Origin: Tetramitus jugosus
Lineage: Eukaryota; Protista; Heterolobosea
Length of the DNA: 64,000 bases
Reading direction: 5' to 3'
Assembly (NCBI GenBank): GCA_937625935.1
Contig: OW569361.1
Span: forward strand, 461,390-525,389
The translations under genes were made by a program, and so were the position numbers. Shown one piece after another: positions 1,851-64,000 of the stretch. Position 1 is the stretch's first letter. Each line of letters opens with the position of its first letter. Below the pieces are notes generated by a model. That model was not told the origin of the DNA and did not search any database. It saw only the letters and a program-made list of their open reading frames with translations.

Positions 1851-3533
1851 ATGAGGAGACAACAAATTTCTGTATTTTCAAGATTGCTCATCTTAGCCTT
1901 CCTTGTGCTATCTTTTGCCAGCGTGCTCGTCCACGCTTCCAAGTCAAGATCCCACTCCAAAGCGAGAGCTCATGCAAGATCCAGAGCTCGTGCAGCTACT
2001 GCTACTACTACCAACAACGCTCAGAATTTCATGATCTGGAACAATGAGAATGGAACTCCCATGATTATCCTTCCACAGGGTATTACAAAGCCAATTGAAA
2101 CCATTTGGGCGTGCTATGGTGCATGGGATGATATGAACGGTGTCTCTGCTGCTATTAGAGCCATGATCCAGAGAGGTGTCGTCCCATACATTCAATCCTA
2201 TTGTTTCGGAGACAATGGATTGAGAGGTAACTTTGAAAAGGCGGTTCAATTTGATACTGCGATTGCACGGGCCATTGGTTCCTCTATTGCCTTTGTCAAT
2301 ATTGATACAGAGTGGGATGATGGAGCTGTGTTGGATATCTTGAGCAGTCCTGCTGGTATTCAGAGCTTCAAGAACAGAATTCAAGTCTATCGTCAATTTG
2401 CTCCAATGACCAAATTGTTGTCCAGTCCAGGTCTATGGAAGACAGATGCTCAATATGCTTGGTTCGCTCAGATTGATGCCTTGTTGGATATGAGAAGTAA
2501 CATTTTCTTTGCGACGAGCAATGAACGTAGTTGCTTGTTGAAGCCAGACGGTGTTTCGATTGGTGTGACTGGAAAGTCATTGAACGAAGCGCTTGCCATG
2601 GGAGATAAGATCAATGCTGATCGATTGAGATTCAATCGTCTGTGGGGCTCTTCTGCAACCAAGTACATCATCACTGGTGATGCTGCAGTGACTAGCTGTG
2701 GATGGGGTGAAACCAATCAAGCTGCTATTATTAACAAGTTGGTCGATCGTATGGATTGCTTGTATAGCGATGGATGGAGAGGTGCCAACATCAGAAACGC
2801 TGGTCCTGATAATTTGTGGGAGCGCGCCATGGGTGTTCAAAACGAAGGTCAATTTGTTTATTCCAATGGAGTGAATGCAAGAAATGCCATGAAGCGTGGA
2901 TTGGACAGAGCTATCCATATTATGAAGAATGGTGCAACTTGTGTGCCACCACCTCCAACACCTTTCACTGTTTCTCACATGAAGAGTTCCAGTCAAAATT
3001 GGGCTCAATTGACTGCTGATCCATCATTTGATGTTGCTGGTATTGTGTTGAACTACAATGGTCAAAGCACAAGATTGAGCAAGGCATCTTGGGGAGAAGA
3101 ATGGGTTGGAGCCGCTAACATTGCAAGTGGAACAAGCGTTCAAGTCGTGATTGAAAAAACTTCTGGCGGATCCACCACTGTTCAAATCGCCTGGTTGCAA
3201 TCTGACTCTGCACCAACTCCTTCTCCAACTCCTACACCTGCACCTGCACCTGCACCTACTCCAGCACCAGCACCTGGTCCAGCCCCAGCTGGTTCTTTGA
3301 CTGTAACTAACACTGGTAGCAATGAATGGTGGGCACAAGTTCAATTGAGTCCAAAAACAGGCATCACCAGTGTAACCATTTCTTACTTGGGTGTTATCCA
3401 ACCACTCAAGTTGGAGAGTTATGGTGACTGGACCTCTGGTTTGAGCTCCAGAATCCCATCTGGAACCAGAGTCACTGTCACCTATGTGAAGTCAGGATCT
3501 TCATTTAGCCAGGCCATTATTTGGGCTGTATAA
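1851..3533 (+). CDS. Secreted protein: putative glycoside-hydrolase-like domain, Pro-rich linkers and two expansin/CBM63-like domains
   Basis: Signal peptide, PPPPTP and (PA/PT)n linkers, and a duplicated ~80 aa module (SSQNWAQL...SWGEEW; GSNEWWAQV...SYGDW). Confidence 0.6.
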   Translation: MRRQQISVFSRLLILAFLVLSFASVLVHASKSRSHSKARAHARSRARAATATTTNNAQNFMIWNNENGTPMIILPQGITKPIETIWACYGAWDDMNGVSAAIRAMIQRGVVPYIQSYCFGDNGLRGNFEKAVQFDTAIARAIGSSIAFVNIDTEWDDGAVLDILSSPAGIQSFKNRIQVYRQFAPMTKLLSSPGLWKTDAQYAWFAQIDALLDMRSNIFFATSNERSCLLKPDGVSIGVTGKSLNEALAMGDKINADRLRFNRLWGSSATKYIITGDAAVTSCGWGETNQAAIINKLVDRMDCLYSDGWRGANIRNAGPDNLWERAMGVQNEGQFVYSNGVNARNAMKRGLDRAIHIMKNGATCVPPPPTPFTVSHMKSSSQNWAQLTADPSFDVAGIVLNYNGQSTRLSKASWGEEWVGAANIASGTSVQVVIEKTSGGSTTVQIAWLQSDSAPTPSPTPTPAPAPAPTPAPAPGPAPAGSLTVTNTGSNEWWAQVQLSPKTGITSVTISYLGVIQPLKLESYGDWTSGLSSRIPSGTRVTVTYVKSGSSFSQAIIWAV

Positions 3534-4981: not shown

Positions 4982-5539
4982 TTACAACAATTTTCCAGAG
5001 CCTTCTTCTCTCAGATACTCACCCACATCTGCTTGATGGAAACAAACAACATCAGTTGGATGCAATTGTCTGCATTCTTCTGTGCTTCTTGCCACAACAC
5101 CAAATCCAAGTGGTGTGTCATTCATACTCATGACAACAACTCCTTGATATTGTGGTGTGTCTTCTGTCATTCTTCCTAGACCAGTCTTGACAACGTGAGA
5201 ACCATACAAGAAGCTTAGCTCAGCGTTTGGTTTGACCCAGATTTTGTATGGAGCAAATTGCGCCAAATAATCCAAACAAGTGACCTGTAGTTGGAATTTT
5301 CCCGTCTTTGTAAAACTTCCGAAACAAATTCCAGCGGACAATAAACGATCAAATGATATGTTGGAGGCTAGTTTGAGCATGCTTGTAGAGAGATAGTAGA
5401 CTTTGTTCTTGTGCAACCGAAACACATATTCTTCTCCTTCTTTCGTCTTCGATTGGAGCATGAGCTTAATGTTTCTACCCACGTATTTTGCTAATTTTTC
5501 AAAAAAAATTCGTGTTTCTTCTTCGGATAGTGGTCTCAT
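4982..5539 (-). CDS. NIP7: 60S ribosome biogenesis protein NIP7
   Basis: [21 protein letters not shown]...[13 protein letters not shown]; PUA domain. Confidence 0.97.
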
Positions 5540-9926: not shown

Positions 9927-10066
9927 TATTAAGAATTTTCTTTGTCTCTTGCTTGGATGAGTGAATAGAGGAGAGGACGATGAGGCGATTTGATTTGATT
10001 TCAACTTATTAGGAATGAATTCAGCTCGGTCATCGATTGATAAACATCAACATAATGTTGAATTCC
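9927..10066. repeat. Internally deleted duplicate of the RWP-RK locus
   Basis: 9927-9966 matches 10668-10713. 9987-10066 matches 11501-11578, with its last ~41 bp inverted. Confidence 0.8.
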
Positions 10067-10572
10067 TCATTGTTGCCATCATTTTCTATTATCACTTTAG
10101 AATCTTCCATTGCTCTCCTTTTCATGATGATGAATGGTGTGAGAATGGGGTTGGTGTTGATAGGAGAGATGGTATTCTTGTTGTTCAACTCTAATTGTTT
10201 TAATAATCCTTGTTCACTCGGTTTCTTGCTAAACAACCAAAATCTCGTAACTATCTTGGTTGTTATTAAAAACAACCAAAAAATTGCTCTGCCTATGTTG
10301 AGAAAAGACAGCTAGGAGTATACGCTGGGGATGCTCGGAATCGAAACACAAGCGATCAAGCAAGTAGCGAAGGGTTTGAAGAAGAGTGGTGTAAATGAGG
10401 AGCTCAACACTAAACGGAGGTGTTTAGAGGTGATACATCATCTCTTCACAAACGCCAAAGAACTTGATGGTTGTTGCGAACATTAACGACCCCGTAGTGA
10501 GCAATTAAGTACCGCAAGTACAATCAACAAAAAACTAAATGCGCAACGTTGGTTGTATTAGAGTTATTGCTT

Positions 10573-11277
10573 CTAACACATTTTTTGATGTTTTCTGTTG
10601 GTTTCTCCCTCCATAGATCCATCACTGGTAGATGTACCACCATCTAGTTGCAAGAATCTTCTCTCTCTATTGAGAATTTTCTTTGTTCCTTGCTTGGACG
10701 AAGATGAGTGAATGGAGCACTGGTTTGGAGATTGCGTTGATGTTCCACCCCTTGGCACATACCTGAAGAATTTAATATTACGAGGTCCTTTTCCATTGAT
10801 CGAGGAATTTCTTTGTGAATCATATTGGATAGCTAACAGCTGTTGTTCTTGGATACTCATGGAAAAGAGACGAGTCAGAGTTTGTACAGTATTAGGGCAG
10901 AGTTCCTTCTCACTCCTTGACTCCTCTTCATTGACCAAATGCCAAACACTTCTTCTCCTTTTATCTTGTGTCAGTTGGTACGGCCATCGACCGATATCCA
11001 ATTGATAAAATCTCCTTTTCAGTGTTGACAAGGAAACACCCAACTTCTGGGCTGCCAGTCGCTGAGGGAAATAGAAGTACTGTTCCATCTCATCTCTCTG
11101 GATTTGAATTTTGTTTCGAAATGAGGTTGGTTTGAATGGGTTCATGACCCTACAGCAAGTGCCTGTTGCATTGTTTCTTTCAGTTTGAGAGGAAGAGAAT
11201 TCTTCAGTGGAATTCATCCTAGACTTGGTTACTCGTTGTTGATGAGCTTCTGTTGCCATATGAAGAGATGAGACCAT
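10573..11277 (-). CDS. RWP-RK domain transcription factor
   Basis: EMEQYFYFPQRLAAQKLGVSLSTLKRRFYQLDIGRWPYQ. Start uncertain (11277 or 11409). Confidence 0.88.
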   Translation of the reverse strand: MVSSLHMATEAHQQRVTKSRMNSTEEFSSSQTERNNATGTCCRVMNPFKPTSFRNKIQIQRDEMEQYFYFPQRLAAQKLGVSLSTLKRRFYQLDIGRWPYQLTQDKRRRSVWHLVNEEESRSEKELCPNTVQTLTRLFSMSIQEQQLLAIQYDSQRNSSINGKGPRNIKFFRYVPRGGTSTQSPNQCSIHSSSSKQGTKKILNRERRFLQLDGGTSTSDGSMEGETNRKHQKMC

Positions 11278-11776
11278 TGTTTTCAAGGTTCGATTAAGAG
11301 AGAGTGTCTGAGTAGTTTTGTTAGTTGCTACATCGATATGAAGGGATGCAGGACTATAAATCTCTGAGCAAAACAACAAGAATTTACTTCGACACATGGA
11401 CTTCATCATAGTCGAAGGAGAAAATGAGGGCTAAGCGAAAGGGGCATTGACAACGAAACGAGAAACATCGAAGGTAATCGATGATGAGCTTTCACGAAGT
11501 GATTTGATTTGATTTCGACTGATTAGGGATGAACTCAACATACGTATGTTGATGTTTGTTTATCGATGACCGATCTGAGGATGCGTTATTCTTCGATACA
11601 ATGCGAGACTGGGAATCGAAGAATGAAATTGCTGATCTTTATTTGAGAATGAAGCGAAAGGATCATATGTATTACACTTTGGGATAACAGATAGCGCCCT
11701 CACTCCTATACTTGACTACATCTAAAACGAGTCAAAGGGTATGAAATAGAGTCGTTCGATTCATTTGGTTACCCCT

Positions 11777-12761
11777 TTAGTTGGACAGGACGATTCTTCC
11801 TACTTGGCTTGTGACTATCTTTTGATAGGTGATACGCATCAGAGTATGAAAGGTTCCAATGTTTGGATACACCCAAGATTGAGAAAACCCTTGAATAGAC
11901 AACAATAATTGTGTAACTATTGCATCTTTCCCCGGATACGTGTTACTATGACTACTTATCCCTGGGATAGTTAGTCCTTGCCACCTTTGGTTTACCCATG
12001 AACACTTAAACTGGGTATCACCAGTTAAAATGGTTCTGCGGAAATATTTTTCCATAGGTGTATGTTCCAGCAAGCATGATTGTTCATTTATTGTCTTTCT
12101 ATGGGAGTGGTCGTCACTCACGCAGCTTCTCTTGTGTCCCGACGGTACAACGTATACTACTTCACGATTATTGAAACAAAGGACGCTTCCCTTCTCCTTC
12201 TGTAGTTCCGCTTCCACATTTAGTCTCCATCGGATCCAATCGACATCTATCTCGTGCAAAATGTTCCGCATTTGTGGCAGTAGCGTTGGTACAGTCCTAT
12301 GTTTAGCCCAGGAGTTGTCTCCATACTAGCAGTGGCTTTGGCAACTTCTTTCTCCGTATGGGAACCTGTTTGTTGTCTACTTGTTAATTTATTGTTGAAT
12401 GCCTTGATGATCATGTGATCTCTCGATGTATCTTGAGAGTGGCCGTGGTCTTTACCTTGTTCTCTCCGCTGAGCACTGCTCGTGCATAGGTTTCATCACC
12501 CATAACCACGAAAGCAGAGTTTCGCTTCTTGAGCTCAGTGGAGACCTTATCAGGTTCCAGCAGCTTATTGATGTCGTCAACTGGCATGTTCTTTATTTCA
12601 TCGGCAATCTCTTTTCTTGTCCAATCAACATGTCGCAGCTGCCTTGCCAAAGATGACAGAGTGGACGCCATCATCGTTGCCAGCAATGACGATCTCTCTG
12701 TCACTTGGGGCTGAGTCTTTCTGTGCAGTGGCAGTGGTCTTCTTAAAGGCAGCTTATACAA
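11777..12761 (-). pseudogene. Fragmented ORFs of unknown origin
   Basis: Two coding-like minus-strand ORFs (12411-12761, 11777-12271) separated by stops; no obvious splice sites. Confidence 0.35.
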
Positions 12762-12873
12762 CCATTGGTTACTTACATCTTTTTCTTGCAGTAAAATTTC
12801 TTTAACTCATTTCCCCGGTTCATTTACAGAAAAATCAACACAGAATTTTTTTGCAGCTTGCCGTCCAACAAAA

Positions 12874-56999: not shown

Positions 57000-59900
57000 T
57001 TAATCATGCTTCTTAGTTCGTTTCTGTGGAGATGCTTGAGAGCTGTCTAATACATCTGCATCACGTTTCTTACTAGTGGAAACTTTCTTCTTCTTTGTTG
57101 GTTGTTGAGAGTCTTTGTCAGGTGGAGACTTTCTCTTCTTGGAAGAGACAGAAGGTTGTGTGGACAGCTTGCTGCTCTTTGCGTTTCTTTTCTTCCTCCT
57201 AGGCGCAGTCATCACTTCATCTCCTTCTTGATCAAGCTTTGCTGCCTGCAACAGTTTATACATGAGAGCACCAACAGTTGAATGTTTGTTCGCACTAACA
57301 TTATATCTCTTCGAGAGTTGAGTAATCAGTACATCTTTAGACATCTTCAAGACCATCTCTCTGGTCAATTCCTGATCATCTGTAATCACTGGTTGCTTAT
57401 TTCCAAACTTCAGAACTGAGTCACCACTGCCTTTCAAAACAGACAACAATCTAGATTTCAGATCGTCCTTAGTACCACGAATATCGTAATTCCTGTGATG
57501 CAGCATGATCTTCAGCTCATTCTTCTTCATCTTATTGATTGCTGTTTCCGTCAAATCTTCAAACGTCACTAGAAGATCATACGCAGCACGACGTTGAATT
57601 GGGTTAGCACATCCAAAGCAGTAGCAGGCTAACGTACAGCCAGCAGAACCTTCCACAGTACAAGAACATGATACACATCCACCAGTACAGTTACATCCAA
57701 CACCTTTCCTCTGACGAGAAAGTTTAATCACTTCCTCTCTGACCTTCTCTTCAGATCCGTACTTATGTACCAACAGACTGTACATCATATGTGTATCATA
57801 CCTAGCACCATGGATCTTTGACTCATCTATCTGTTCTACCTGCTTTAGTCGGTGATTGAATATATCCGCAAGCTTGCCAACCCTGTCAATGATCCTACCT
57901 TCATCATCACACACAAACTCTTCCCCAATAAGCTTCCTAGCATCCACCCATACAACATCATACTCATCAAACTCTGGTACCAGTTCACTACAACTTGTAA
58001 TCCTGGAATCATCGAATGCTGAGTTGAAAGCAACACAGATGGCTCTACATCTCCTGTCACAAGTGACTAATCTGTAGAAGGCCTGAATACCTTTCTCAAG
58101 CAAAGGCTGCCCAATTACATCTTCCCTAGGTGAGTTTCAAGAGCTGTTGGATAATGATAAGGTCGTCGATTGCACTGTCCACACTGAAACCAGTGCTTCT
58201 TGTGACTGGTTTTCTTGTGACCTGTAGTCTCTCCCTGTGAGGCAAGTTTCAATCTCATGTAGTGTATAATACAAGCGTTGTAGTACTTGGATGGTTGTTG
58301 GACATCTGATGGTAAAGACCATCGACGAATTGTTGGATCTGTACAAATTATACGTTGATCCCACTCTGATCTACCAGATAGTGTACTAAATTCGCAAGCA
58401 GTTACCCCACGAGTGACACAAAATGTCAGCTCAACTGCGAGCGTTGACAATGCCGATCTCTTTAGGTGGTATGATACCTGTCTCTCATTCAGATATTGTA
58501 CAAGCTTGTACAAATTATTGACAGTAGTGGTAACATGGCGACTGGTCTGTGATGCCAGTTTAAACTGAGCAGATTTTTCTGATGCATTCCACCCACATAT
58601 ATAACTCATTAGACTGTCCTCTGTGACTGTCTCACTTGGTTTGGATTTACCATACAATCGTACATCCATAAAGCAATCATACAAGCTTCGGATTTGACCC
58701 AAGTATTGTGATAGCTCGAGCGCTGAGCTGCGTTCTTGCTCAGAGTACATATCTTCTGGTAAGCTCTTGTAAGTGCTGTTTGCACTCTCTCTGATGTGAT
58801 CTCTAAACATGGAAGCATTTTCATGATGTCTGGAGGATTCAACCAACTGTCTTTGATAAAGCTTAAAACTCCATCACTAGGACTCTTATTACACAGATCA
58901 ATCAGTAAATTCATATGTATCTGGTGTCCACCAGGTTCCAGCCCTCTGTTCAGCAGGGCATTTCTCAGAGCCTTCAGTAGATAACTGAAGTCAAACAAGT
59001 GAAACCACGAAGTGCCATACTTGTCTCTCATATACTTCTCCATATAACTCTGCACTGCATCGTTACATAAATCGCCATCAGGGAGCGTCCAGATATTATT
59101 TCTTACGGCCCCCTAGGGAGGGGGTCTGAGAAATTTATTCAAATATTTATTCATAGGGGGTCTCTTGATTCCAATCCTAGTAGGAGAATTAACGTAACGT
59201 TCGAATGTACAGGAAAATGTGTTATTCAAATTTATTCACAACACGGAAAAAAATAAATCATTGCAATCTGATTCTATAGAGCTCACCGTCTACTATTATG
59301 CCATTCTGGTCGATATCAACAGGATTGGTATCAGGCTGTTCAACAGTGACATTAACCAGAAGTGAGTATCCTTGCCTTCATACACTCCAATAATATAGTG
59401 GTTGAGATCAAGCATTAACTTATTCCTTGGCACGTTCTTATCAGACAATGTCACGTGCGTCATGTTCTTCTTGAGATCATTGTTTGCATTCTTATACAGA
59501 AACTTTGCGTCTCCACCAAGAGCATGATCGCCTGTTGGAAGTTTAAGGAATGTAATATCTTTTTCATTCACTCTCGACTCTGATATTACCTGTCTCTCCA
59601 AGCTTGTTCATAATAGGTTGATAGTCCTTCTCGAGCTCAGCAAGTCGTTCTGGAGTGTACTGTATCCAACTGTCCATCTTCATGCTATCTTTTGATAGTC
59701 TGATCATATAGAAGCTATCAATTCGATTACTGATGCTCCTGTTCTTCTATAACCTATGCCATCAACAACATTCGTTGTGAGTTCTCTACAGCGATTTCGT
59801 TGTTGAGGGCTTCTGAATTTCTTTGGTGTTGGTGCTTTTGGTGGTGTATCCACTGTACTAGGTCGAGTTCGCTTGTTCCTACTTCCTGGAGGTCTACCAC

Positions 59901-60057
59901 GACCCTTTTTTGGTGTTGGCTGTGTGTTGCCTTGATCGCTCTCTGGTTGTGTGTTGTCCGGATGTGAACCTCTGTCTGTACACTGTGATCCATCTCGTTG
60001 AGTGTTGTCAGTACTCTGCGTATTGTCTTGTGTTCCAGCCGTTGTCACACCATTCAC
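57000..60057 (-). mobile_element. Frameshifted P-element/THAP9-like DDE transposase with AT-hook, C2H2, DEDDh exonuclease, CXC and SAP domains
   Basis: GRGRPPG; GGDA; DGDLCN; FDFSYLLKALRN; LNPPDIMKM...SERVQTAL; LAVELTF..TR; CGQC...H; VAFNSAFD...HGARYD; CNC...CYC..CANP; MKKNELK..L...GTKDDLKSRL. Confidence 0.75.
59080..59262. mobile_element. ~180 bp non-coding insertion interrupting the transposase (transposon-end-like)
   Basis: Separates YRIRLQ from DGDLCN. Contains four TTATTCA copies, two GGGGGTCT copies and a CCCCCT...AGGGGG palindrome. Confidence 0.5.
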
Positions 60058-60185
60058 TTGAACAGTGTAAATTTCAAATGACGCATCTATAGCAGTGTGT
60101 GCACTACGGTTCTGAGTGAATATGCTTCGTTTCGTTCTTATGAATGTAGGAACAAGGTGATCCCTTACGCCAAATGCCTTTCCAA

Positions 60186-60205
60186 TGGGTTGGGTTTGGG
60201 TTTGG
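60186..60205 (+). repeat. Interstitial telomeric repeat
   Basis: TGGGTTGGGTTTGGGTTTGG, same orientation as the terminal array. Confidence 0.85.
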
Positions 60206-63059
60206 TGTTACATCCGCGTTTTGGTAAACCCATACCCAACCTCTGGTTAACTATCATTGCACTGGCAGCGTTAGCTGACAGTGCTGAACAAAAAAACTGT
60301 ATATTTATCAAAAAAAAAACTGTTTTATTCGGTTTCACTATCCGAGAGGATGATGTCATCCATCTCAAAATATTCTTCCTCTAAATCCTCCCCGACTATA
60401 GCTGAGTTATACTCTTTTTCCAATTCATCTTTCAACTTTTGAAACTTATTCTTCACTTTTTCCAACTCTGCTTCTTCTTTCTTCATTAAGGCTCCCAACT
60501 TTCTCTTGTAGGTACTCTTGCTCAGAACATTGCTCTTATTGGATTTGCCTTTGCCCCTCAACCTTTTCTCAGTCTCCTTTTTGACGAACGCTTGTGCTTT
60601 TGGATCAACTAACCATTTTCTGATGATTGAACTAGCACCATAGGCTCTTTCAATAGCTCTTCTTCTATCTCTATTCTTCTCTCCCTTGTATTGTAGATCA
60701 GTTACCAGGAATTTCTGACATTGTTTATCAGTTGCTGCTTCATTTTCTGATTTTTGTTTCCAAAACGCCAACCAAACAGAATCTTTACTACCCTTCTCCT
60801 CCTTCATAGCTCTATCTAAGCCTTTGTCAATTCCTCTCCAGTAGTCTTTGAAGAACTTTGGAGGTTGTAGCCTTCTTACATGTGGTTTCCATCTCCTTGT
60901 CTTCTTACCAGTGTAATCATGATAGATCAAAGATGTTAGAACAGCTGCATCAGTAATCTGGGCATTTTCATCCACAGTTGCAATTTCAGAATCTTCTTCT
61001 AAGAATCCCATATCGATAGCCCTTTGATTAATTGTTCTCAAATTCTCCACTCTTTCTGAAGGTTCTTGAATGGCATTGATGGAGGAAAAGTATTGAGTAA
61101 TCCATCTATCATAAGGCTTGAGACTCTCTTTGTTCTTCCAGTGAACAAAATCTGCAAGACTCTCAGATACCCTATCATCAACAACACCATTATTCTCAAT
61201 TCTATTTCTCAATAAACAAGTGACAACCAAACCAGATCTCATTGATCTTGTTGAATATTGCTTCCCAATGGTCTTTGACAAGTTTTTCATGGCATTGCTC
61301 ATATCACGATTCTGCCAGGAAGAAATTTTTCCAGAAGGAGTGAAAAGAGGTTCTTTGTCTGCATCAACAATCAGATCGAATTTACCCGCAATCAAACAAT
61401 TAGCAGCTGAGCCCTTTTTGAACACTTTTCTACAATCGGCCAAGTAAATCAACAAAGCAATGTTGGGACACATTGACAAGTTCACCCAACCAAACAAATT
61501 CTGTCTCCAGAGATCTCCTAACAAGACTTTATCCTTCTTGATTTTCATGTTCACACTCAATCTTATCTTATTATCAGCAACCGTCTTTGTCCAAGTTAAG
61601 TGCTTCAACTTGACATATTGGAAACTGTCTGATCTGAGACCTCTTGCTCTTCCTTGAGCTAATAAAGCATCCAATCTAGCTTCACTCTCGATATGTTGAT
61701 CACACATCAATCTGAGCTTGACCAAATCAGGATTCATCAATGGTTCCACCTTGAACTTGTCATTTCCGAACTTTCTCAGTAATGCCTTCAGTGTGTTCTT
61801 TATCTCTAGCCCCAATTCACCACGAATATCTCGATCTCTCTTCGTTTTGAAAGCAAAGGAAAGAAAACCGTAGCAAAAAGTACTCTGGATAGTGGAGAAC
61901 TTATAATCCTTATCAACTCTCAACCAGTAGAGGTACATCATCAACGTCAATTTCTTCATTGGATAAGGGGTTGGTTGATAAATGTGAAAATCACGATACT
62001 TGGAGTTCATGGTCCTTAAAAAGGAAAAGTATCGTCTTTCGGCGAAGCGAAACAAGTCAACAGTTGCTGGAGCATACTGAGTTCTTGCAATGCTTGCAGT
62101 GATTGCAGTGGCTGCATCTTCCAATCTCTCCATCTCACTCAAAGGACCAAAGGGAACATCAGGGACAAGATCTTCATCAGTTACGCTACCTCTGAATGAA
62201 TCATTGATTTCAGTGAACTCCAACTCACTGATTGGTCTTGAACTGTTCTGGGTATCATTCAATAAAACTAAGTCAGACTCAGCAATAGATTTCTCAACGA
62301 CAGCTTCAAGGTTCAGGGCCTCACCAATGTCTTCCAAATCAGCAACATCATAGCTATCATGGTCCTCCATTCTAGCCAAATCTTCATACAATTTGGTGAC
62401 AGATTGCTCAAAGGTAGTATCAACAGTAGGAATAACAGAAGCAGGAACAGCAGTAGAAGCCGACATAGTAGTATAGTTAATTATATTGGGTGTGGTTGTG
62501 TTTTTTGTTTGATTGATCCGTTCTCCTCTGCTTTTATTTGGAGTTCTGGTGGTCAACTTGCTTTTCGGTCAACTCATTGAAATGTTCTCTAACGGTTGTT
62601 TTGACATGTTAGTTGAATCATGTCAACTCATCTGTCAGTCATCCATCATCGGAGGTTCAACTACAACATCTCAATCTCTGTCACTCTTCATCTTCAACCT
62701 CTCTAATTCCAACCGTTCCTTATTTACCCGTTCATCATCGACTAGCGTGAAGCATCTTCAAATCAGCTGAACTCCGTTAGATCTTCTGATACTTTGGTTG
62801 AACTCTCTGTTTATTTTGAGATTTGTATTTTTCTTAGTCCCACAGGCGTTGTTTCTCAATTTTCCGTGCCACGGTCCTGGACCGTGAACCTTGCATTCGT
62901 TGAACCAATTTATTCCGATGAAGAATCGGGACTATAAAGAAGGGGAGAGGAAAGACTCGAACATTTGACCGCCGACACCTTATCCCGACGTCTCAAGCGT
63001 CTACCTTACTGAAGCAGTACTACAAAATAAACAAAAAATTGGCAGTCGAACTTTTTTCC
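60206..63059 (-). mobile_element. Tyrosine-recombinase-only (Crypton-like) element embedded in telomeric repeat
   Basis: Single long YR ORF, bounded by ...TTTGG on the left and GTTTGGG... on the right. No RT, no long terminal repeats. Confidence 0.7.
60325..62466 (-). CDS. Tyrosine recombinase (713 aa from ATG 62466)
   Basis: Core-binding domain (YAPATV...YLYWL...KFSTI); GLRSDS (R); KKDK (K); CPNIALLIYL; YSTRSMRSG (HxxR box); HWKNKESLKPY (W, catalytic Y). Confidence 0.88.
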   Translation of the reverse strand: MSASTAVPASVIPTVDTTFEQSVTKLYEDLARMEDHDSYDVADLEDIGEALNLEAVVEKSIAESDLVLLNDTQNSSRPISELEFTEINDSFRGSVTDEDLVPDVPFGPLSEMERLEDAATAITASIARTQYAPATVDLFRFAERRYFSFLRTMNSKYRDFHIYQPTPYPMKKLTLMMYLYWLRVDKDYKFSTIQSTFCYGFLSFAFKTKRDRDIRGELGLEIKNTLKALLRKFGNDKFKVEPLMNPDLVKLRLMCDQHIESEARLDALLAQGRARGLRSDSFQYVKLKHLTWTKTVADNKIRLSVNMKIKKDKVLLGDLWRQNLFGWVNLSMCPNIALLIYLADCRKVFKKGSAANCLIAGKFDLIVDADKEPLFTPSGKISSWQNRDMSNAMKNLSKTIGKQYSTRSMRSGLVVTCLLRNRIENNGVVDDRVSESLADFVHWKNKESLKPYDRWITQYFSSINAIQEPSERVENLRTINQRAIDMGFLEEDSEIATVDENAQITDAAVLTSLIYHDYTGKKTRRWKPHVRRLQPPKFFKDYWRGIDKGLDRAMKEEKGSKDSVWLAFWKQKSENEAATDKQCQKFLVTDLQYKGEKNRDRRRAIERAYGASSIIRKWLVDPKAQAFVKKETEKRLRGKGKSNKSNVLSKSTYKRKLGALMKKEEAELEKVKNKFQKLKDELEKEYNSAIVGEDLEEEYFEMDDIILSDSETE

Positions 63060-64000
63060 GTTTGGGTTTGGGTTTGGGTTTGGGTTTGGGTTTGGGTTTG
63101 GGTTTGGGTTTGGGTTTGGGTTTGGGTTTGGGTTTGGGTTTGGGTTTGGGTTTGGGTTTGGGTTTGGGTTTGGGTTTGGGTTTGGGTTTGGGTTTGGGTT
63201 TGGGTTTGGGTTTGGGTTTGGGTTTGGGTTTGGGTTTGGGTTTGGGTTTGGGTTTGGGTTTGGGTTTGGGTTTGGGTTTGGGTTTGGGTTTGGGTTTGGG
63301 TTTGGGTTTGGGTTTGGGTTTGGGTTTGGGTTTGGGTTTGGGTTTGGGTTTGGGTTTGGGTTTGGGTTTGGGTTTGGGTTTGGGTTTGGGTTTGGGTTTG
63401 GGTTTGGGTTTGGGTTTGGGTTTGGGTTTGGGTTTGGGTTTGGGTTTGGGTTTGGGTTTGGGTTTGGGTTTGGGTTTGGGTTTGGGTTTGGGTTTGGGTT
63501 TGGGTTTGGGTTTGGGTTTGGGTTTGGGTTTGGGTTTGGGTTTGGGTTTGGGTTTGGGTTTGGGTTTGGGTTTGGGTTTGGGTTTGGGTTTGGGTTTGGG
63601 TTTGGGTTTGGGTTTGGGTTTGGGTTTGGGTTTGGGTTTGGGTTTGGGTTTGGGTTTGGGTTTGGGTTTGGGTTTGGGTTTGGGTTTGGGTTTGGGTTTG
63701 GGTTTGGGTTTGGGTTTGGGTTTGGGTTTGGGTTTGGGTTTGGGTTTGGGTTTGGGTTTGGGTTTGGGTTTGGGTTTGGGTTTGGGTTTGGGTTTGGGTT
63801 TGGGTTTGGGTTTGGGTTTGGGTTTGGGTTTGGGTTTGGGTTTGGGTTTGGGTTTGGGTTTGGGTTTGGGTTTGGGTTTGGGTTTGGGTTTGGGTTTGGG
63901 TTTGGGTTTGGGTTTGGGTTTGGGTTTGGTTTGGGTTTGGGTTTGGGTTTGGGTTTGGGTTTGGGTTTGGGTTTGGGTTTGGGTTTGGGTTTGGGTTTGG
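63060..64000 (+). repeat. Telomere (TTTGGG)n
   Basis: At least 940 bp of hexamer repeat to the window end, G-rich strand running 5'->3' outward. One TTTGG variant near 63925. Confidence 0.97.

What the first reader, a model, noticed from the sequence alone, without database searches (positions are those of the whole stretch)
60186..63100. Candidate telomere-targeting tyrosine-recombinase DNA element
Seen: an intact 713-aa tyrosine recombinase is the only long ORF in a 2,854-bp segment. The left flank is telomeric repeat ending ...GGGTTTGG (60205) and the right flank starts GTTTGGG... (63060). Removing 60206-63059 rejoins a perfectly phased TTTGG^GTTTGGG array with no target duplication. The neighbouring transposase and portal-like genes are decayed, but this ORF is uninterrupted. 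Known: YR-only eukaryotic transposons are Cryptons, and the telomere-repeat-specific elements I know of are retroelements (TRAS/SART, Athena-type Penelopes). Inference: a site-specific YR element that uses the telomeric hexamer as its attachment site and may populate, excise from or reshuffle chromosome ends.
Basis: partly seen in the sequence, partly recalled or inferred. Interest (0 to 1): 0.93.

Follow-up and report, generated by a model that had tools for sequence, protein, structure and literature searches.

The report
Recombinase gene units building amoeba chromosome ends
The last 2.9 kb before this amoeba chromosome's telomere is one member of a large family of units that each encode a Cre-like DNA recombinase, sit at nearly every chromosome end here and in Naegleria and Willaertia, and seem to be stacked onto worn or broken ends, a DNA-recombinase counterpart of yeast Y' elements and telomeric retrotransposons.

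Summary
Window 60328-62466(-) is an intact 713-aa ORF lying between a 19-nt telomere-like tract (60187-60205) and the real 941-nt (TTTGGG)n terminus of contig C18. No Pfam or PDB sequence match exists, but a family-based AlphaFold model hits Cre, XerA, XerH and lambda Int (Z 13-19). R/K/R-x-x-R/W/Y are invariant with Cre-like spacing.

It is not a lone insertion. It belongs to a diverged paralog family (25-62% identity, dN/dS 0.06-0.19). Of 47 genomic matches, 42 lie within about 12 kb of a contig end. The layout short telomeric seed, then recombinase unit, then telomere recurs in Naegleria gruberi, Willaertia magna and uncultured relatives.

Internal tracts are 11-35 nt (one of 87) against telomeres of about 700-950 nt. 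They often abut breakpoints inside genes or truncated units. The 19-mer plus 36-nt terminus recurs at seven ends with different flanks.

The best reading is stepwise terminal addition of units onto short seeds. A role for the recombinase in moving units is inferred, not shown. First readers of this scan noted similar units at other ends of this genome.

The parts
59081..60186 (.). Proximal flank. It is a dispersed repeat (59081-59264 high copy; 59265-60185 in 3 copies) that is cut off where the telomeric seed begins. It is not part of the unit.
   Evidence: Depth is roughly 10-100 times that of neighbouring bins and many loose ends start at 59080/59081. There is a 99% copy at C9:302688-303609 and a partial 100% copy at C35:275068. 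59265-60182 is absent from two groundwater metagenomes that carry the unit.
60187..60205 (+). 19-nt telomeric seed (internal telomere-like tract), GGGTTGGGTTTGGGTTTGG, with the same polarity as the terminal telomere.
   Evidence: The identical or near-identical 19-mer precedes the same terminus at C1L, C4L, C7L, C9L, C30L and C32R.
60206..60241 (+). 36-nt proximal terminal module, TGTTACATCCGCGTTTTGGTAAACCCATACCCAACC. Its C-rich 3' part pairs with the seed (16-bp stem).
   Evidence: 34/34 nt are exact at 7 chromosome ends, with 0 hits in the control. Fold z is -5.3 as DNA and -4.5 as RNA. The junction class GGGTTTGG+KDWTACRT has 42 sites, all within about 5.3 kb of a contig end where this could be judged and all pointing toward the telomere.
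60248..60290 (+). 43-nt conserved block just 3' of the stop codon. It contains the 26-bp palindrome/hairpin GCACTGGCAGC-GTTA-GCTGACAGTGC (60259-60284). It is a candidate recombinase site or a 3'-end hairpin.
   Evidence: It is 98% identical to C25, C28, C49 and C50 copies where the ORF is only 70% identical. The 22-nt core has 12 sites; 10 lie within about 7 kb of a contig end, the other two being C50 at 21.5 kb and the deep C49 copy. All point toward the telomere and the control gives 0. The arms covary (GCAC/GTGC versus GTAC/GTAC) while the central 4 nt vary.
60325..62466 (-). Gene for a 713-aa tyrosine recombinase, stop codon included. It has an acidic N-terminus, a core-binding plus catalytic domain at about aa 125-470, and a helical, lysine-rich C-terminal region. 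It is transcribed from the telomere side toward the centromere.
   Evidence: R278, K311/K313, R410 (R407 near-invariant), W443 and Y452 are invariant in 14 paralogs. dN/dS is 0.18 against C19L and C28R.
62467..63059 (-). Upstream (5') region of the unit, ending at the distal terminus ...AACTTTTTTCC.
   Evidence: Homology to the C19L unit runs to within about 116 nt of this end, where the C19L copy is truncated and re-seeded.
62870..62886 (.). 17-bp palindrome CACGGTCCTGGACCGTG with a conserved flank, about 400 nt upstream of the ATG. It is probably a promoter or factor-binding site.
   Evidence: It has 22 sites in the genome; at least 2 are internal and most of the rest lie near contig ends (not every contig length is known). 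The control gives 1. The module is inverted together with the gene orientation.
63060..64000 (+). Terminal telomere, (GTTTGG)157, running to the contig end.
   Evidence: the window ends at C18:525389, which is the contig length.

Best explanation
This is the outermost unit of the right subtelomere of chromosome/contig C18. It is a telomere-associated DNA unit whose only gene encodes a very divergent Cre/Xer-like tyrosine recombinase.

Shown:
- Such units, in many old lineages and in ORF-less derivatives of about 1 kb, make up the subtelomeres of essentially all sampled chromosome ends.
- They lie head-to-tail, separated by very short G-strand telomeric seeds.
- Older, often truncated layers lie further inside.
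- The recombinase genes are kept intact by purifying selection.
- The same layout exists in Naegleria, Willaertia and uncultured relatives.

Inferred mechanism:
- Chromosome ends erode or break.
- Telomerase lays down about 2-3 repeats, beginning GGGTTGGG.
- A new unit is then joined by its defined proximal terminus (seed + TGTTACAT...RACC). It is copied or recombined from another end or from an extrachromosomal copy, and it carries or regains a full telomere at its distal end.
- The recombinase is proposed to catalyse the transfer, exchange or excision of units between ends, probably at the conserved palindromic block next to its stop codon or at the terminal module.
- Units that keep a working recombinase therefore keep being re-seeded on new ends.

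The unit was not inserted into the middle of a long telomere array.
For: - Recombinase fold: Cre Z 18.7, XerA 15.8, XerH 15.7, lambda Int 13.1 (VIA-align); Foldseek E 1e-6 to Cre.
- Catalytic-type residues are invariant or nearly so in 14 paralogs, with Cre-like spacing.
- End restriction: 42 of 47 matches lie within about 12 kb of contig ends, which make up about 5% of the genome.
- All 21 sampled ends carry at least one short seed of telomere polarity.
- There are 42 seed+TACRT junctions, all near contig ends where this could be judged, with 0 in the control.
- Seeds sit at breakpoints inside truncated recombinase genes, followed by new units (C9R, C51R, C19L). A 5' gene fragment is followed by seed+TGTTACAT at C1L.
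- Contigs of the source organism hold junctions absent from the assembly. One has the unit truncated at 61193 and followed by seed+terminus, at about 30 depth against 38 on the main path. Another is 62951+CA+seed.
- Two groundwater metagenomes carry the unit at 99.6% identity joined to a different proximal sequence.
- dN/dS is 0.06-0.19.
- The proximal 55-160 nt and the 43-nt palindrome block are far better conserved than the unit interiors.
- Three group-B copies with dS 0.3-2.7 share the same distal end, CAATTTTCC(G/T)A|TTTGGG.
- The layout is conserved elsewhere: N. gruberi has (TTTGGG)4, then the gene, then terminal (TTTGGG)61. W. magna and metagenomic contigs with P0015 or P0014 show the same.
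Against: - No recombination product, circle junction or empty site was observed. Only assembled contigs, not raw reads, could be laid.
- Copies are old and nearly single-copy per lineage (dS at least 0.3), with no burst of near-identical copies. The only identical pairs (C25R = C28R; C13L = C13R, a truncated copy) look like whole-end copying by ordinary recombination, which needs no dedicated recombinase.
- No symmetric core site spans the telomeric junction.
- The seed-to-terminus fold-back is strong in only 9 of 32 junctions.
- The histidine of the canonical H-x-x-R is an arginine (R407), so catalysis is unproven.
- Gene orientation relative to the telomere differs between lineages, which no simple model predicts.
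Confidence: 0.55

Rival explanations
1. Passive subtelomeric gene family (yeast Y'-like). The units spread and homogenise only by break-induced replication or homologous recombination started from short telomeric seeds. The recombinase is a host or domesticated gene that merely resides there, or acts elsewhere, and plays no part in unit movement.
For: - Both ends of C13 carry the same truncated gene healed at the same base.
- C25R and C28R units are identical, including the distal junction, while their seeds and flanks differ.
- Paralogs are old (dS 0.3 to saturated).
- Short seeds are what invasion by a critically short telomere would leave.
- The yeast Y' precedent (established knowledge).
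Against: - A gene living in a zone of frequent terminal loss should decay, yet about 12 lineages stay intact with dN/dS 0.06-0.19 and invariant catalytic residues.
- The tie to chromosome ends persists across genera.
- Short terminal modules and a palindrome block are conserved far above their surroundings, which pure recombination does not require.
- An N. gruberi member carries a chromodomain, as many mobile-element integrases do.
Confidence: 0.25
2. A Crypton-like element excises as a circle and integrates site-specifically into (TTTGGG)n, using the telomeric hexamer as crossover site. It can excise precisely, restoring the array.
For: - Units have telomeric sequence on both sides.
- Removing the window unit restores repeat phase.
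- There is no RT and there are no terminal repeats.
- Defined proximal and, in several families, distal termini exist.
- Telomere-repeat-specific recombinases exist in nimaviruses (PMC10871703).
Against: - Proximal tracts are 11-87 nt in 32 of 32 cases, although telomeres are about 700-950 nt.
- Tracts abut non-telomeric breakpoints inside genes.
- The same 19-mer travels with the terminus at 7 flanks.
- Phase is not restored at C19L (...TTTGG / TTTGGG).
- No circle junction appears in contigs (a weak test).
Confidence: 0.1
3. RNA-mediated terminal addition (Athena/Terminon-like) using the reverse transcriptase of Penelope-like elements that sit at other ends. The unit's transcript would end in ...AUGUAACA-CCAAACCCAAACCCAACCC, anneal to a G-rich 3' end and be copied. 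The recombinase gene would be cargo.
For: - In gene sense, the window unit ends with reverse-complement telomeric repeats after a stable 3' hairpin.
- Distally truncated units are capped by short telomeric tracts in head-to-tail arrays, as described for Terminons (PMC6431247).
- Weak RT hits at the ends of C3, C17, C10 and C48 all point inward.
- C3 has seed+TGTTACAT at 5260-5275, downstream of its RT ORF.
Against: - There is no RT in the unit and no hammerhead ribozyme or other Rfam motif in the unit termini searched.
- Most family members (group B here, N. gruberi, P0015, P0014) have the gene pointing toward the telomere, so the templating RNA would be antisense to it.
Confidence: 0.1

Closest known systems
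Cryptons (eukaryotic DNA transposons whose only enzyme is a tyrosine recombinase; Goodwin 2003; Kojima & Jurka 2011, PMC3212892)
   Same: A tyrosine recombinase is the sole enzyme. There is no RT and no LTR or TIR. The unit is small (about 3 kb). Language-model neighbours are fungal NDC10_II/Crypton-like and DUF3435 clusters, and one family member has a sub-threshold NDC10_II hit.
   Different: Cryptons are dispersed and recombine at short arbitrary target identities. These units are confined to chromosome termini, stacked in one polarity and bounded by telomeric seeds. No sequence-level membership could be shown (no Pfam hit). Naegleria is not mentioned in that survey.
Athena / Terminon telomere-attached Penelope-like retroelements (PMC6431247)
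   Same: Head-to-tail arrays at chromosome ends. The proximal end carries reverse-complement telomeric repeats after a terminal fold. Distal truncations are capped by short telomeric stretches. Host gene fragments are trapped between units.
   Different: No reverse transcriptase and no hammerhead ribozyme. The enzyme is a recombinase. Gene orientation is not fixed.
Yeast Y' elements and fungal telomere-linked helicase genes
   Same: An ORF-bearing unit lies between an internal telomeric tract and the terminal telomere, in arrays, with evidence of end-to-end copying (C13, C25/C28).
   Different: They encode a helicase, not a recombinase. Here the internal tracts are much shorter and the termini are sharply defined.
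Telomere-repeat-specific tyrosine recombinases of endogenous nimaviruses (PMC10871703)
   Same: A tyrosine recombinase is associated with integration next to telomeric repeats on both sides.
   Different: Those are 280-400 kb viral genomes inserted within (TAACC)n tracts of crustaceans. Their recombinases carry zinc-binding and arm-binding domains. No relationship was tested here.
Cre, XerA/XerH, lambda Int (bacterial, archaeal and phage tyrosine recombinases)
   Same: The two-domain fold and the active-site layout R...K...x-x-R...W...Y, with W-to-Y spacing of 9 as in Cre.
   Different: Sequence identity is 12-14%. Arginine replaces the first histidine. There are long acidic N-terminal and basic helical C-terminal extensions of unknown fold.

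Membership tests
Tyrosine recombinase superfamily | Two-domain fold: a helical core-binding domain plus the catalytic domain | tested here: met
   Model pLDDT is 81.6. Foldseek gives Cre at E 1e-6, probability 1.0. VIA-align gives Cre Z 18.7 over residues 1-347, XerA 15.8, XerH 15.7, Flp 10.0 and topoisomerase IB 12.4.
Tyrosine recombinase superfamily | Catalytic R-K-H-R-(H/W)-Y residues | tested here: inconclusive
   R278, K311/K313, R410, W443 and Y452 are invariant, and R407 nearly so, in 14 paralogs. Spacing is 33/99/33/9, against 28/91/23/9 in Cre (the Cre numbers are from my own knowledge). The first H is R. Residues were assigned by motif and spacing, not by a residue-level superposition, and no activity assay was done.
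Crypton | The recombinase is the only enzyme; no RT; no LTR or TIR | tested here: met
   It is the only long ORF. There are no other Pfam domains and no terminal repeats.
Crypton | Dispersed copies integrated at short target identities | tested here: not met
   Copies are almost exclusively within about 12 kb of chromosome ends and are bounded by telomeric seeds.
Crypton | Recombinase groups phylogenetically with CryptonF/S/A/I | not tested
   No reference Crypton sequences were on hand. There are only indirect leads.
Athena/Terminon (endonuclease-less Penelope-like elements) | Penelope-type reverse transcriptase | tested here: not met
   No RT domain in the unit. RVT_1 hits lie at other loci.
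Athena/Terminon (endonuclease-less Penelope-like elements) | 3'-terminal hammerhead ribozyme followed by reverse-complement telomeric repeats | tested here: not met
   The reverse-complement repeats are present at the gene-sense 3' end, but there is no hammerhead or any Rfam hit in the window's terminal 5.3 kb (L001) or in six 9.5-9.9-kb chromosome-end loci at E<=1.
Y'-type subtelomeric element | Unit between an internal telomeric tract and the terminal telomere, in arrays, spread by recombination | tested here: met
   Identical ends at C13L/C13R and C25R/C28R.
Y'-type subtelomeric element | Encodes a helicase | tested here: not met
   The ORF is a tyrosine recombinase.
Telomere resolvase (protelomerase) | Closest structural similarity to TelK/TelA/ResT, and a perfect palindromic target at hairpin ends | tested here: not met
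   TelA Z 7.1, TelK 5.9 and ResT 4.9, against Cre 18.7. Chromosomes end in ordinary (TTTGGG)n.

The most novel reading that the evidence does not exclude
Heterolobosean amoebae maintain and rebuild chromosome ends with a recombinase-driven system. Units encoding a Cre-like enzyme would be attached by that enzyme to nascent or critically short telomeres, possibly through folded single-strand hairpin sites as in integron attC or CTX-phage integration. This would be a DNA-level, recombinase-based counterpart of Drosophila HeT-A/TART or rotifer Terminons, and a back-up to telomerase.
Probability: 0.15. Interest if true: 0.9.

Novelty: new variant of a known kind. Interest (0 to 1): 0.68.

Why it matters
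Chromosome ends are known to be built by four means:
- telomerase;
- retrotransposons (Drosophila, rotifers);
- recombination of Y'-type repeats;
- in some bacteria and phages, hairpin-forming recombinases.

A clade-wide family of tyrosine-recombinase units stacked at every telomere of Naegleria-type amoebae would add a DNA-recombinase element to that list.

The finding would be useful in several ways:
- It gives compact, sharply bounded substrates for asking how a Cre-like enzyme can be aimed at chromosome termini: a 55-nt terminal module and a 43-nt palindrome block.
- It explains the structure and rapid turnover of subtelomeres in this group.
- It is practical for assembling and comparing Naegleria and Willaertia genomes. 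The recombinase genes are currently annotated as 'hypothetical'.
- It offers a very divergent eukaryotic recombinase with a presumably short target.

Tried and rejected
- **Sequence searches of the ORF.** Pfam, PDB by sequence as a single protein and as a profile, and Pfam on all paralog cores gave nothing above noise. Only structure revealed the family.
- **C-terminal 224 aa.** Folded with the family alignment (pLDDT 71, helical) and searched with Foldseek against PDB. No match, so a Myb/telobox-like telomere-binding domain is not supported.
- **Hammerhead ribozyme or other RNA families at unit termini.** None found.
- **Seed-plus-terminus fold-back as a general rule.** Rejected. It is strong in only 9 of 32 junctions, mostly one lineage.
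- **The 17-bp palindrome CACGGTCCWGGACCGTG as recombination site.** It travels with gene orientation, about 400 nt upstream of the ATG, and also occurs at two internal loci. It is more likely a promoter element.
- **A symmetric core site across the hypothetical circle joint** (distal end + repeats + proximal end). None seen by eye.
- **Census of all 112 chromosome ends.** Sequence-level statements rest on 21 ends plus genome-wide pattern searches.
- **The same limit** prevented reading the 3' ends of the RT-bearing elements at C3, C17, C10 and C48.
- **Metagenome scan for more relatives.** Gave one short locus only.
- **Reads.** Only Logan contigs were available, with no raw reads and no RNA run. 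Circles, rare junctions, transcript ends and expression could not be tested.
- **Literature.** Searches for a prior description found none in the held library. This is not proof of absence.


Full report
**1. What is in the sequence**

The window is the right end of contig C18 (525,389 bp) of a 26.35-Mb, 56-contig assembly. From 63060 to 64000 it is 157 copies of GTTTGG.

Between 60206 and 63059 the only long ORF is 60328-62466 on the minus strand. It is 713 aa from its ATG.

To the left lies a 19-nt tract, GGGTTGGGTTTGGGTTTGG (60187-60205). Left of that is non-telomeric DNA.

The left 'telomere' is only three repeats long, and its first repeat is irregular. The unit has no terminal direct or inverted repeats.

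Earlier notes of this scan place the organism among heterolobosean amoebae. My own homolog searches agree: named relatives are from Willaertia magna, Naegleria gruberi and N. lovaniensis, and these also have TTTGGG telomeres.

**2. Is it a tyrosine recombinase?**

Sequence methods fail:
- Pfam gives nothing.
- PDB by sequence gives nothing, as a single protein or as a profile.
- A word-indexed search of 5.8 billion proteins finds only four hits.

I therefore aligned 13-14 paralogs from this genome and folded the conserved core, aa 125-500. The model has pLDDT 81.6.
- Foldseek's best 27 PDB hits are all Cre or the Cre-derived Tre, the best at E 1e-6 with probability 1.0.
- An independent all-against-representatives search gives Cre Z 18.7, XerA 15.8, XerH 15.7, Tn1549 Int 13.5, IntI 13.5, lambda Int 13.1, Flp 10.0 and Ndc10 9.2. 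Telomere resolvases score only 4.9-7.1.
- Both the core-binding and the catalytic domain are matched.

Across paralogs that are only 24-62% identical to the window protein, the invariant residues include R278 (in G-x-R), K311/K313, R410, W443 and Y452. R407 is nearly invariant. Their spacing is like Cre's R173/K201/H289/R292/W315/Y324 (Cre numbering from my own knowledge). Arginine takes the place of the first histidine.

The C-terminal 224 aa are helical and match no known fold. There is therefore no evidence for a Myb-type telomere-binding domain.

**3. It is one of a family that lives at chromosome ends**

A six-frame search of the genome gives 47 matches.
- 42 lie within about 12 kb of a contig end.
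- The exceptions are one decayed copy on C49, at least 14 kb from the end, and a 27-aa fragment on C43.
- About a dozen genes are full length, all within 6 kb of an end.

Two broad groups exist.
- Group A includes the window, C19L, C25R, C28R (two copies) and C21R. They are 37-62% identical and transcribed away from the telomere.
- Group B includes C15L, C42R, C41L, C43L and C9R. They are about 25-30% identical to the window protein and transcribed toward the telomere, often after a 320-aa coiled-coil ORF. C24L and C50R form a third lineage at a similar distance, one in each orientation.
- A group-A-like gene on C51R points the other way.

Pairwise dN/dS is 0.06-0.19, so these are working genes, not relics.

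**4. Architecture of the ends**

- In all 20, plus the window, the last few kilobases hold one to three short G-strand tracts. Thirty-one are 11-35 nt and one is 87 nt.
- All have the polarity of the terminal telomere, which is itself about 700-950 nt in these loci.
- The tracts divide the subtelomere into units stacked head to tail.

Many tracts read GGGTTGGGTTTGGGTTTGG(GG). They sit on arbitrary breakpoints:
- inside a recombinase gene eight codons before its stop (C9R);
- mid-gene (C51R);
- 116 nt short of a unit's distal end (C19L);
- after a 5' fragment of a group-B gene (C1L).

On C13 a recombinase gene is cut mid-way and capped directly by the terminal telomere. The identical structure is at both ends of that contig.

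Fragments of older units lie deeper, for example at -7.5 kb on C19L and -7.7 kb on C9R.

The picture is one of repeated loss, healing and outward accretion.

**5. Defined unit termini**

Proximal side:
- The window's seed plus the next 36 nt (TGTTACATCCGCGTTTTGGTAAACCCATACCCAACC) occurs at seven ends next to unrelated unique DNA. The 34-nt core is exact and the reversed-pattern control gives zero.
- Beyond those 55 nt the window unit and the six others diverge abruptly.
- Genome-wide, the junction GGGTTTGG + (K)(D)(W)TACRT occurs 42 times. All hits point toward the telomere and lie within about 5.3 kb of a contig end where this could be judged. The control gives zero.
- Thirty-one of these belong to an ORF-less unit family of about 1 kb. 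It shares its proximal 110 nt, or its distal 330 nt, with recombinase-bearing units. Its members are 74-88% identical inside but 96-98% identical over the first 160 nt.
- Among 26 distinct termini, a TAYRT-type box in the first 16 nt and an RACC word at +7 to +32 are enriched (p about 1e-9 and 4e-8). This pattern was defined after seeing the data, and the termini are related by descent.
- N. gruberi (…TTACATTACCC) and W. magna (GG|TGTATCAATTCACCAGACCC) show the same kind of terminus.

Distal side:
- Several families end at a fixed base before the telomere.
- Examples are …GAAGTTGA|TTTGGG in many ORF-less units and …CAATTTTCC(G/T)A|TTTGGG in three group-B copies whose dS is 0.3-2.7.
- An uncultured relative ends …CAAAGTTGAGA|TTTGGG.

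**6. Candidate cis elements in the window unit**

- The seed and the C-rich part of the 36-nt module form a 16-bp stem.
- A second hairpin is the 26-bp palindrome at 60259-60284.
- The 110-nt region folds far better than shuffles: z -5.3 as DNA and -4.5 as RNA on the gene strand.
- The 43-nt block around the palindrome is 98% identical between units whose ORFs are 70% identical.
- Its 22-nt core has 12 genomic sites. Ten lie within about 7 kb of a contig end, all point toward the telomere, and the control gives zero.
- The arms covary while the central four bases differ between lineages.

This pattern fits two readings: a lox/FRT-like site of two arms plus an 8-bp crossover region, or a 3'-end stem-loop with a variable loop. 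I cannot tell which.

A 17-bp palindrome at 62870-62886 has 22 sites, mostly subtelomeric. It flips together with gene orientation and lies 400 nt upstream of the ATG. I read it as a promoter element.

**7. Evidence from other samples**

Only assembled Logan contigs could be laid, so rare forms are invisible. Three observations still bear on dynamics.
- Two groundwater metagenomes carry the unit at about 99.6% identity (9-11 differences in a 2,379-nt contig). They have no depth over 59265-60182. A contig there joins a different sequence, apparently the end of a dispersed repeat, directly to the seed at 60184.
- In the source organism's own runs there are junctions absent from the assembly. In one, the unit is cut at 61193 inside the ORF and followed by G + GGTTTGGGTTTGG + TGTTACAT…, at depth about 30 against about 38 for the full-length path. 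Another joins 62951 + CA + the seed.
- Depth falls stepwise toward the end (134, 51, 38-60, 36). This suggests that not all chromosome copies carry this exact end.

The proximal flank 59081-60185 is itself a repeat, with a 99% copy at C9:302688. The locus of the metagenomic junction therefore cannot be fixed.

**8. Beyond this genome**

A profile search of 1.8 billion representatives finds 99 proteins. Contexts read:
- N. gruberi XP_002676414 (921 aa, with a chromodomain) lies between (TTTGGG)4 and the terminal (TTTGGG)61 of its scaffold.
- One W. magna gene is 1.4 kb from a contig end that finishes in TTTGGG repeats. Another is 118 nt from a contig end, with a C-strand seed 4.4 kb inside.
- Metagenomic contigs carrying P0015 show seed (14 nt), then a 5.6-kb unit, then a telomere at the contig end.
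- Contigs with P0014 end in the telomere 2 kb after the gene.
- The two N. lovaniensis genes are internal.

The association is old and clade-wide.

**9. Mechanism**

What is shown:
- a recombinase fold;
- conservation under selection;
- restriction to chromosome ends;
- stacked units with short seeds;
- defined termini;
- ongoing truncation followed by re-addition.

What is inferred is how units are joined. Insertion at random into a telomere of about 750-950 nt cannot give 32 of 32 proximal tracts of 87 nt or less, nor seeds sitting on gene-internal breakpoints.

Addition onto a nascent or critically short telomere fits all the anatomy. It could occur in three ways:
- by recombinase-mediated transfer, exchange or excision of units (my preferred reading, because something must keep about a dozen recombinase lineages intact in a zone of constant loss, and because short terminal and palindromic modules are conserved);
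- by plain break-induced replication, as for yeast Y' (clearly operating for whole ends: C13, C25/C28);
- by RNA-templated addition using Penelope-like reverse transcriptases present at other ends.

For the third route, the gene-sense 3' end of the window unit does mimic an Athena/Terminon 3' end (PMC6431247). However, there is no RT or hammerhead in the unit, and most family members face the wrong way.

**10. Comparison and novelty**

The unit works most like a hybrid of three things: a Crypton (recombinase-only DNA element; PMC3212892), a Y' element (position, arrays) and Athena/Terminon (terminal stacking, seeds). It fails at least one defining feature of each; see the membership table.

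A tyrosine recombinase tied to telomeric repeats has a precedent in endogenous nimaviruses (PMC10871703). Those are giant viral genomes inserted within arrays.

I found no description of these heterolobosean units in the held literature. The Naegleria and Willaertia genes are annotated as hypothetical or 'Tyr recombinase domain-containing'.

Other first-stage notes of this scan flagged similar units at other ends of the same genome.

I rate it a new variant of a known kind, interest about 0.68.

Noticed in passing
window 59081-59264 (and 59265-60185): A high-copy dispersed repeat, with word depth roughly 10-100 times that of neighbouring bins and many different left flanks starting at 59080/59081. 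It is probably the end of a transposon with MITE-like short derivatives. The longer part, 59265-60185, has a 99% copy at C9:302688-303609 and a partial 100% copy at C35:275068-275522.
   Followed up: partly
G000 C13, both ends (L037, L038): Both ends of contig C13 carry the same recombinase gene, truncated at the same codon and capped by the telomere. There is also the same seed about 4.1 kb inside. This is either a recent copy of one chromosome end onto the other or an assembly duplication.
   Followed up: partly
G000 C3:2089-2301(+), C17:2337-2549(+), C10:606104-606316(-), C48:379851-380063(-): Weak RVT_1 hits in long open frames (490-1273 aa) near contig ends, all transcribed toward the centromere. 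These are presumably the Penelope-like telomeric retroelements noted by other first readers. On C3 a seed+TGTTACAT junction lies downstream of the RT ORF, so they may share the unit terminus.
   Followed up: partly
window 62870-62886 and 21 other sites: The 17-bp palindrome CACGGTCCWGGACCGTG, with a conserved flank GGTTCAACGAA, is found almost only in subtelomeres. It has two internal sites (C40:154249, C44:79296) and is a possible binding site for a subtelomere-specific factor.
   Followed up: partly
L050 (N. gruberi GG738872.1) 10001-12766; protein P0021: The N. gruberi family member carries a C-terminal chromodomain (PF00385, E 5e-10), as heterochromatin-targeting integrases do.
   Followed up: no
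protein P0099 (913 aa, source not looked up): A distant family member (profile E 8e-4) has a Myb-like DNA-binding domain at 676-715, the domain type used by telomere-repeat-binding proteins.
   Followed up: no
L048 (W. magna JBEGDK010000020.1) 2607-3086: A histone-fold gene and another small gene lie inside the W. magna unit, between the recombinase gene and the proximal C-strand seed. They are possibly cargo.
   Followed up: no
window 58500-63075 in runs X1/X2: Word depth in the source organism's runs drops stepwise toward the telomere (about 134, 51, 38-60, 36), and an alternative continuation starts at 59080. Different chromosome copies or cells seem to carry different ends.
   Followed up: partly
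L041 3236-4189(-), L034, L036 N-terminus: Group-B units carry a coiled-coil ORF of about 320 aa upstream of the recombinase gene. It is fused to the recombinase in the 1107-aa C41L protein, and a 5' fragment of it is trapped in the C1L subtelomere. It has no Pfam family.
   Followed up: partly
L046 2074-4215(-) and L043 7087-8154(-): Host or transposon genes sit just inside the first seed. They include an open frame with faint MULE similarity that runs into the seed (C4L) and a DDE_Tnp_1_7 (PiggyBac-type) transposase fragment (C5L).
   Followed up: no
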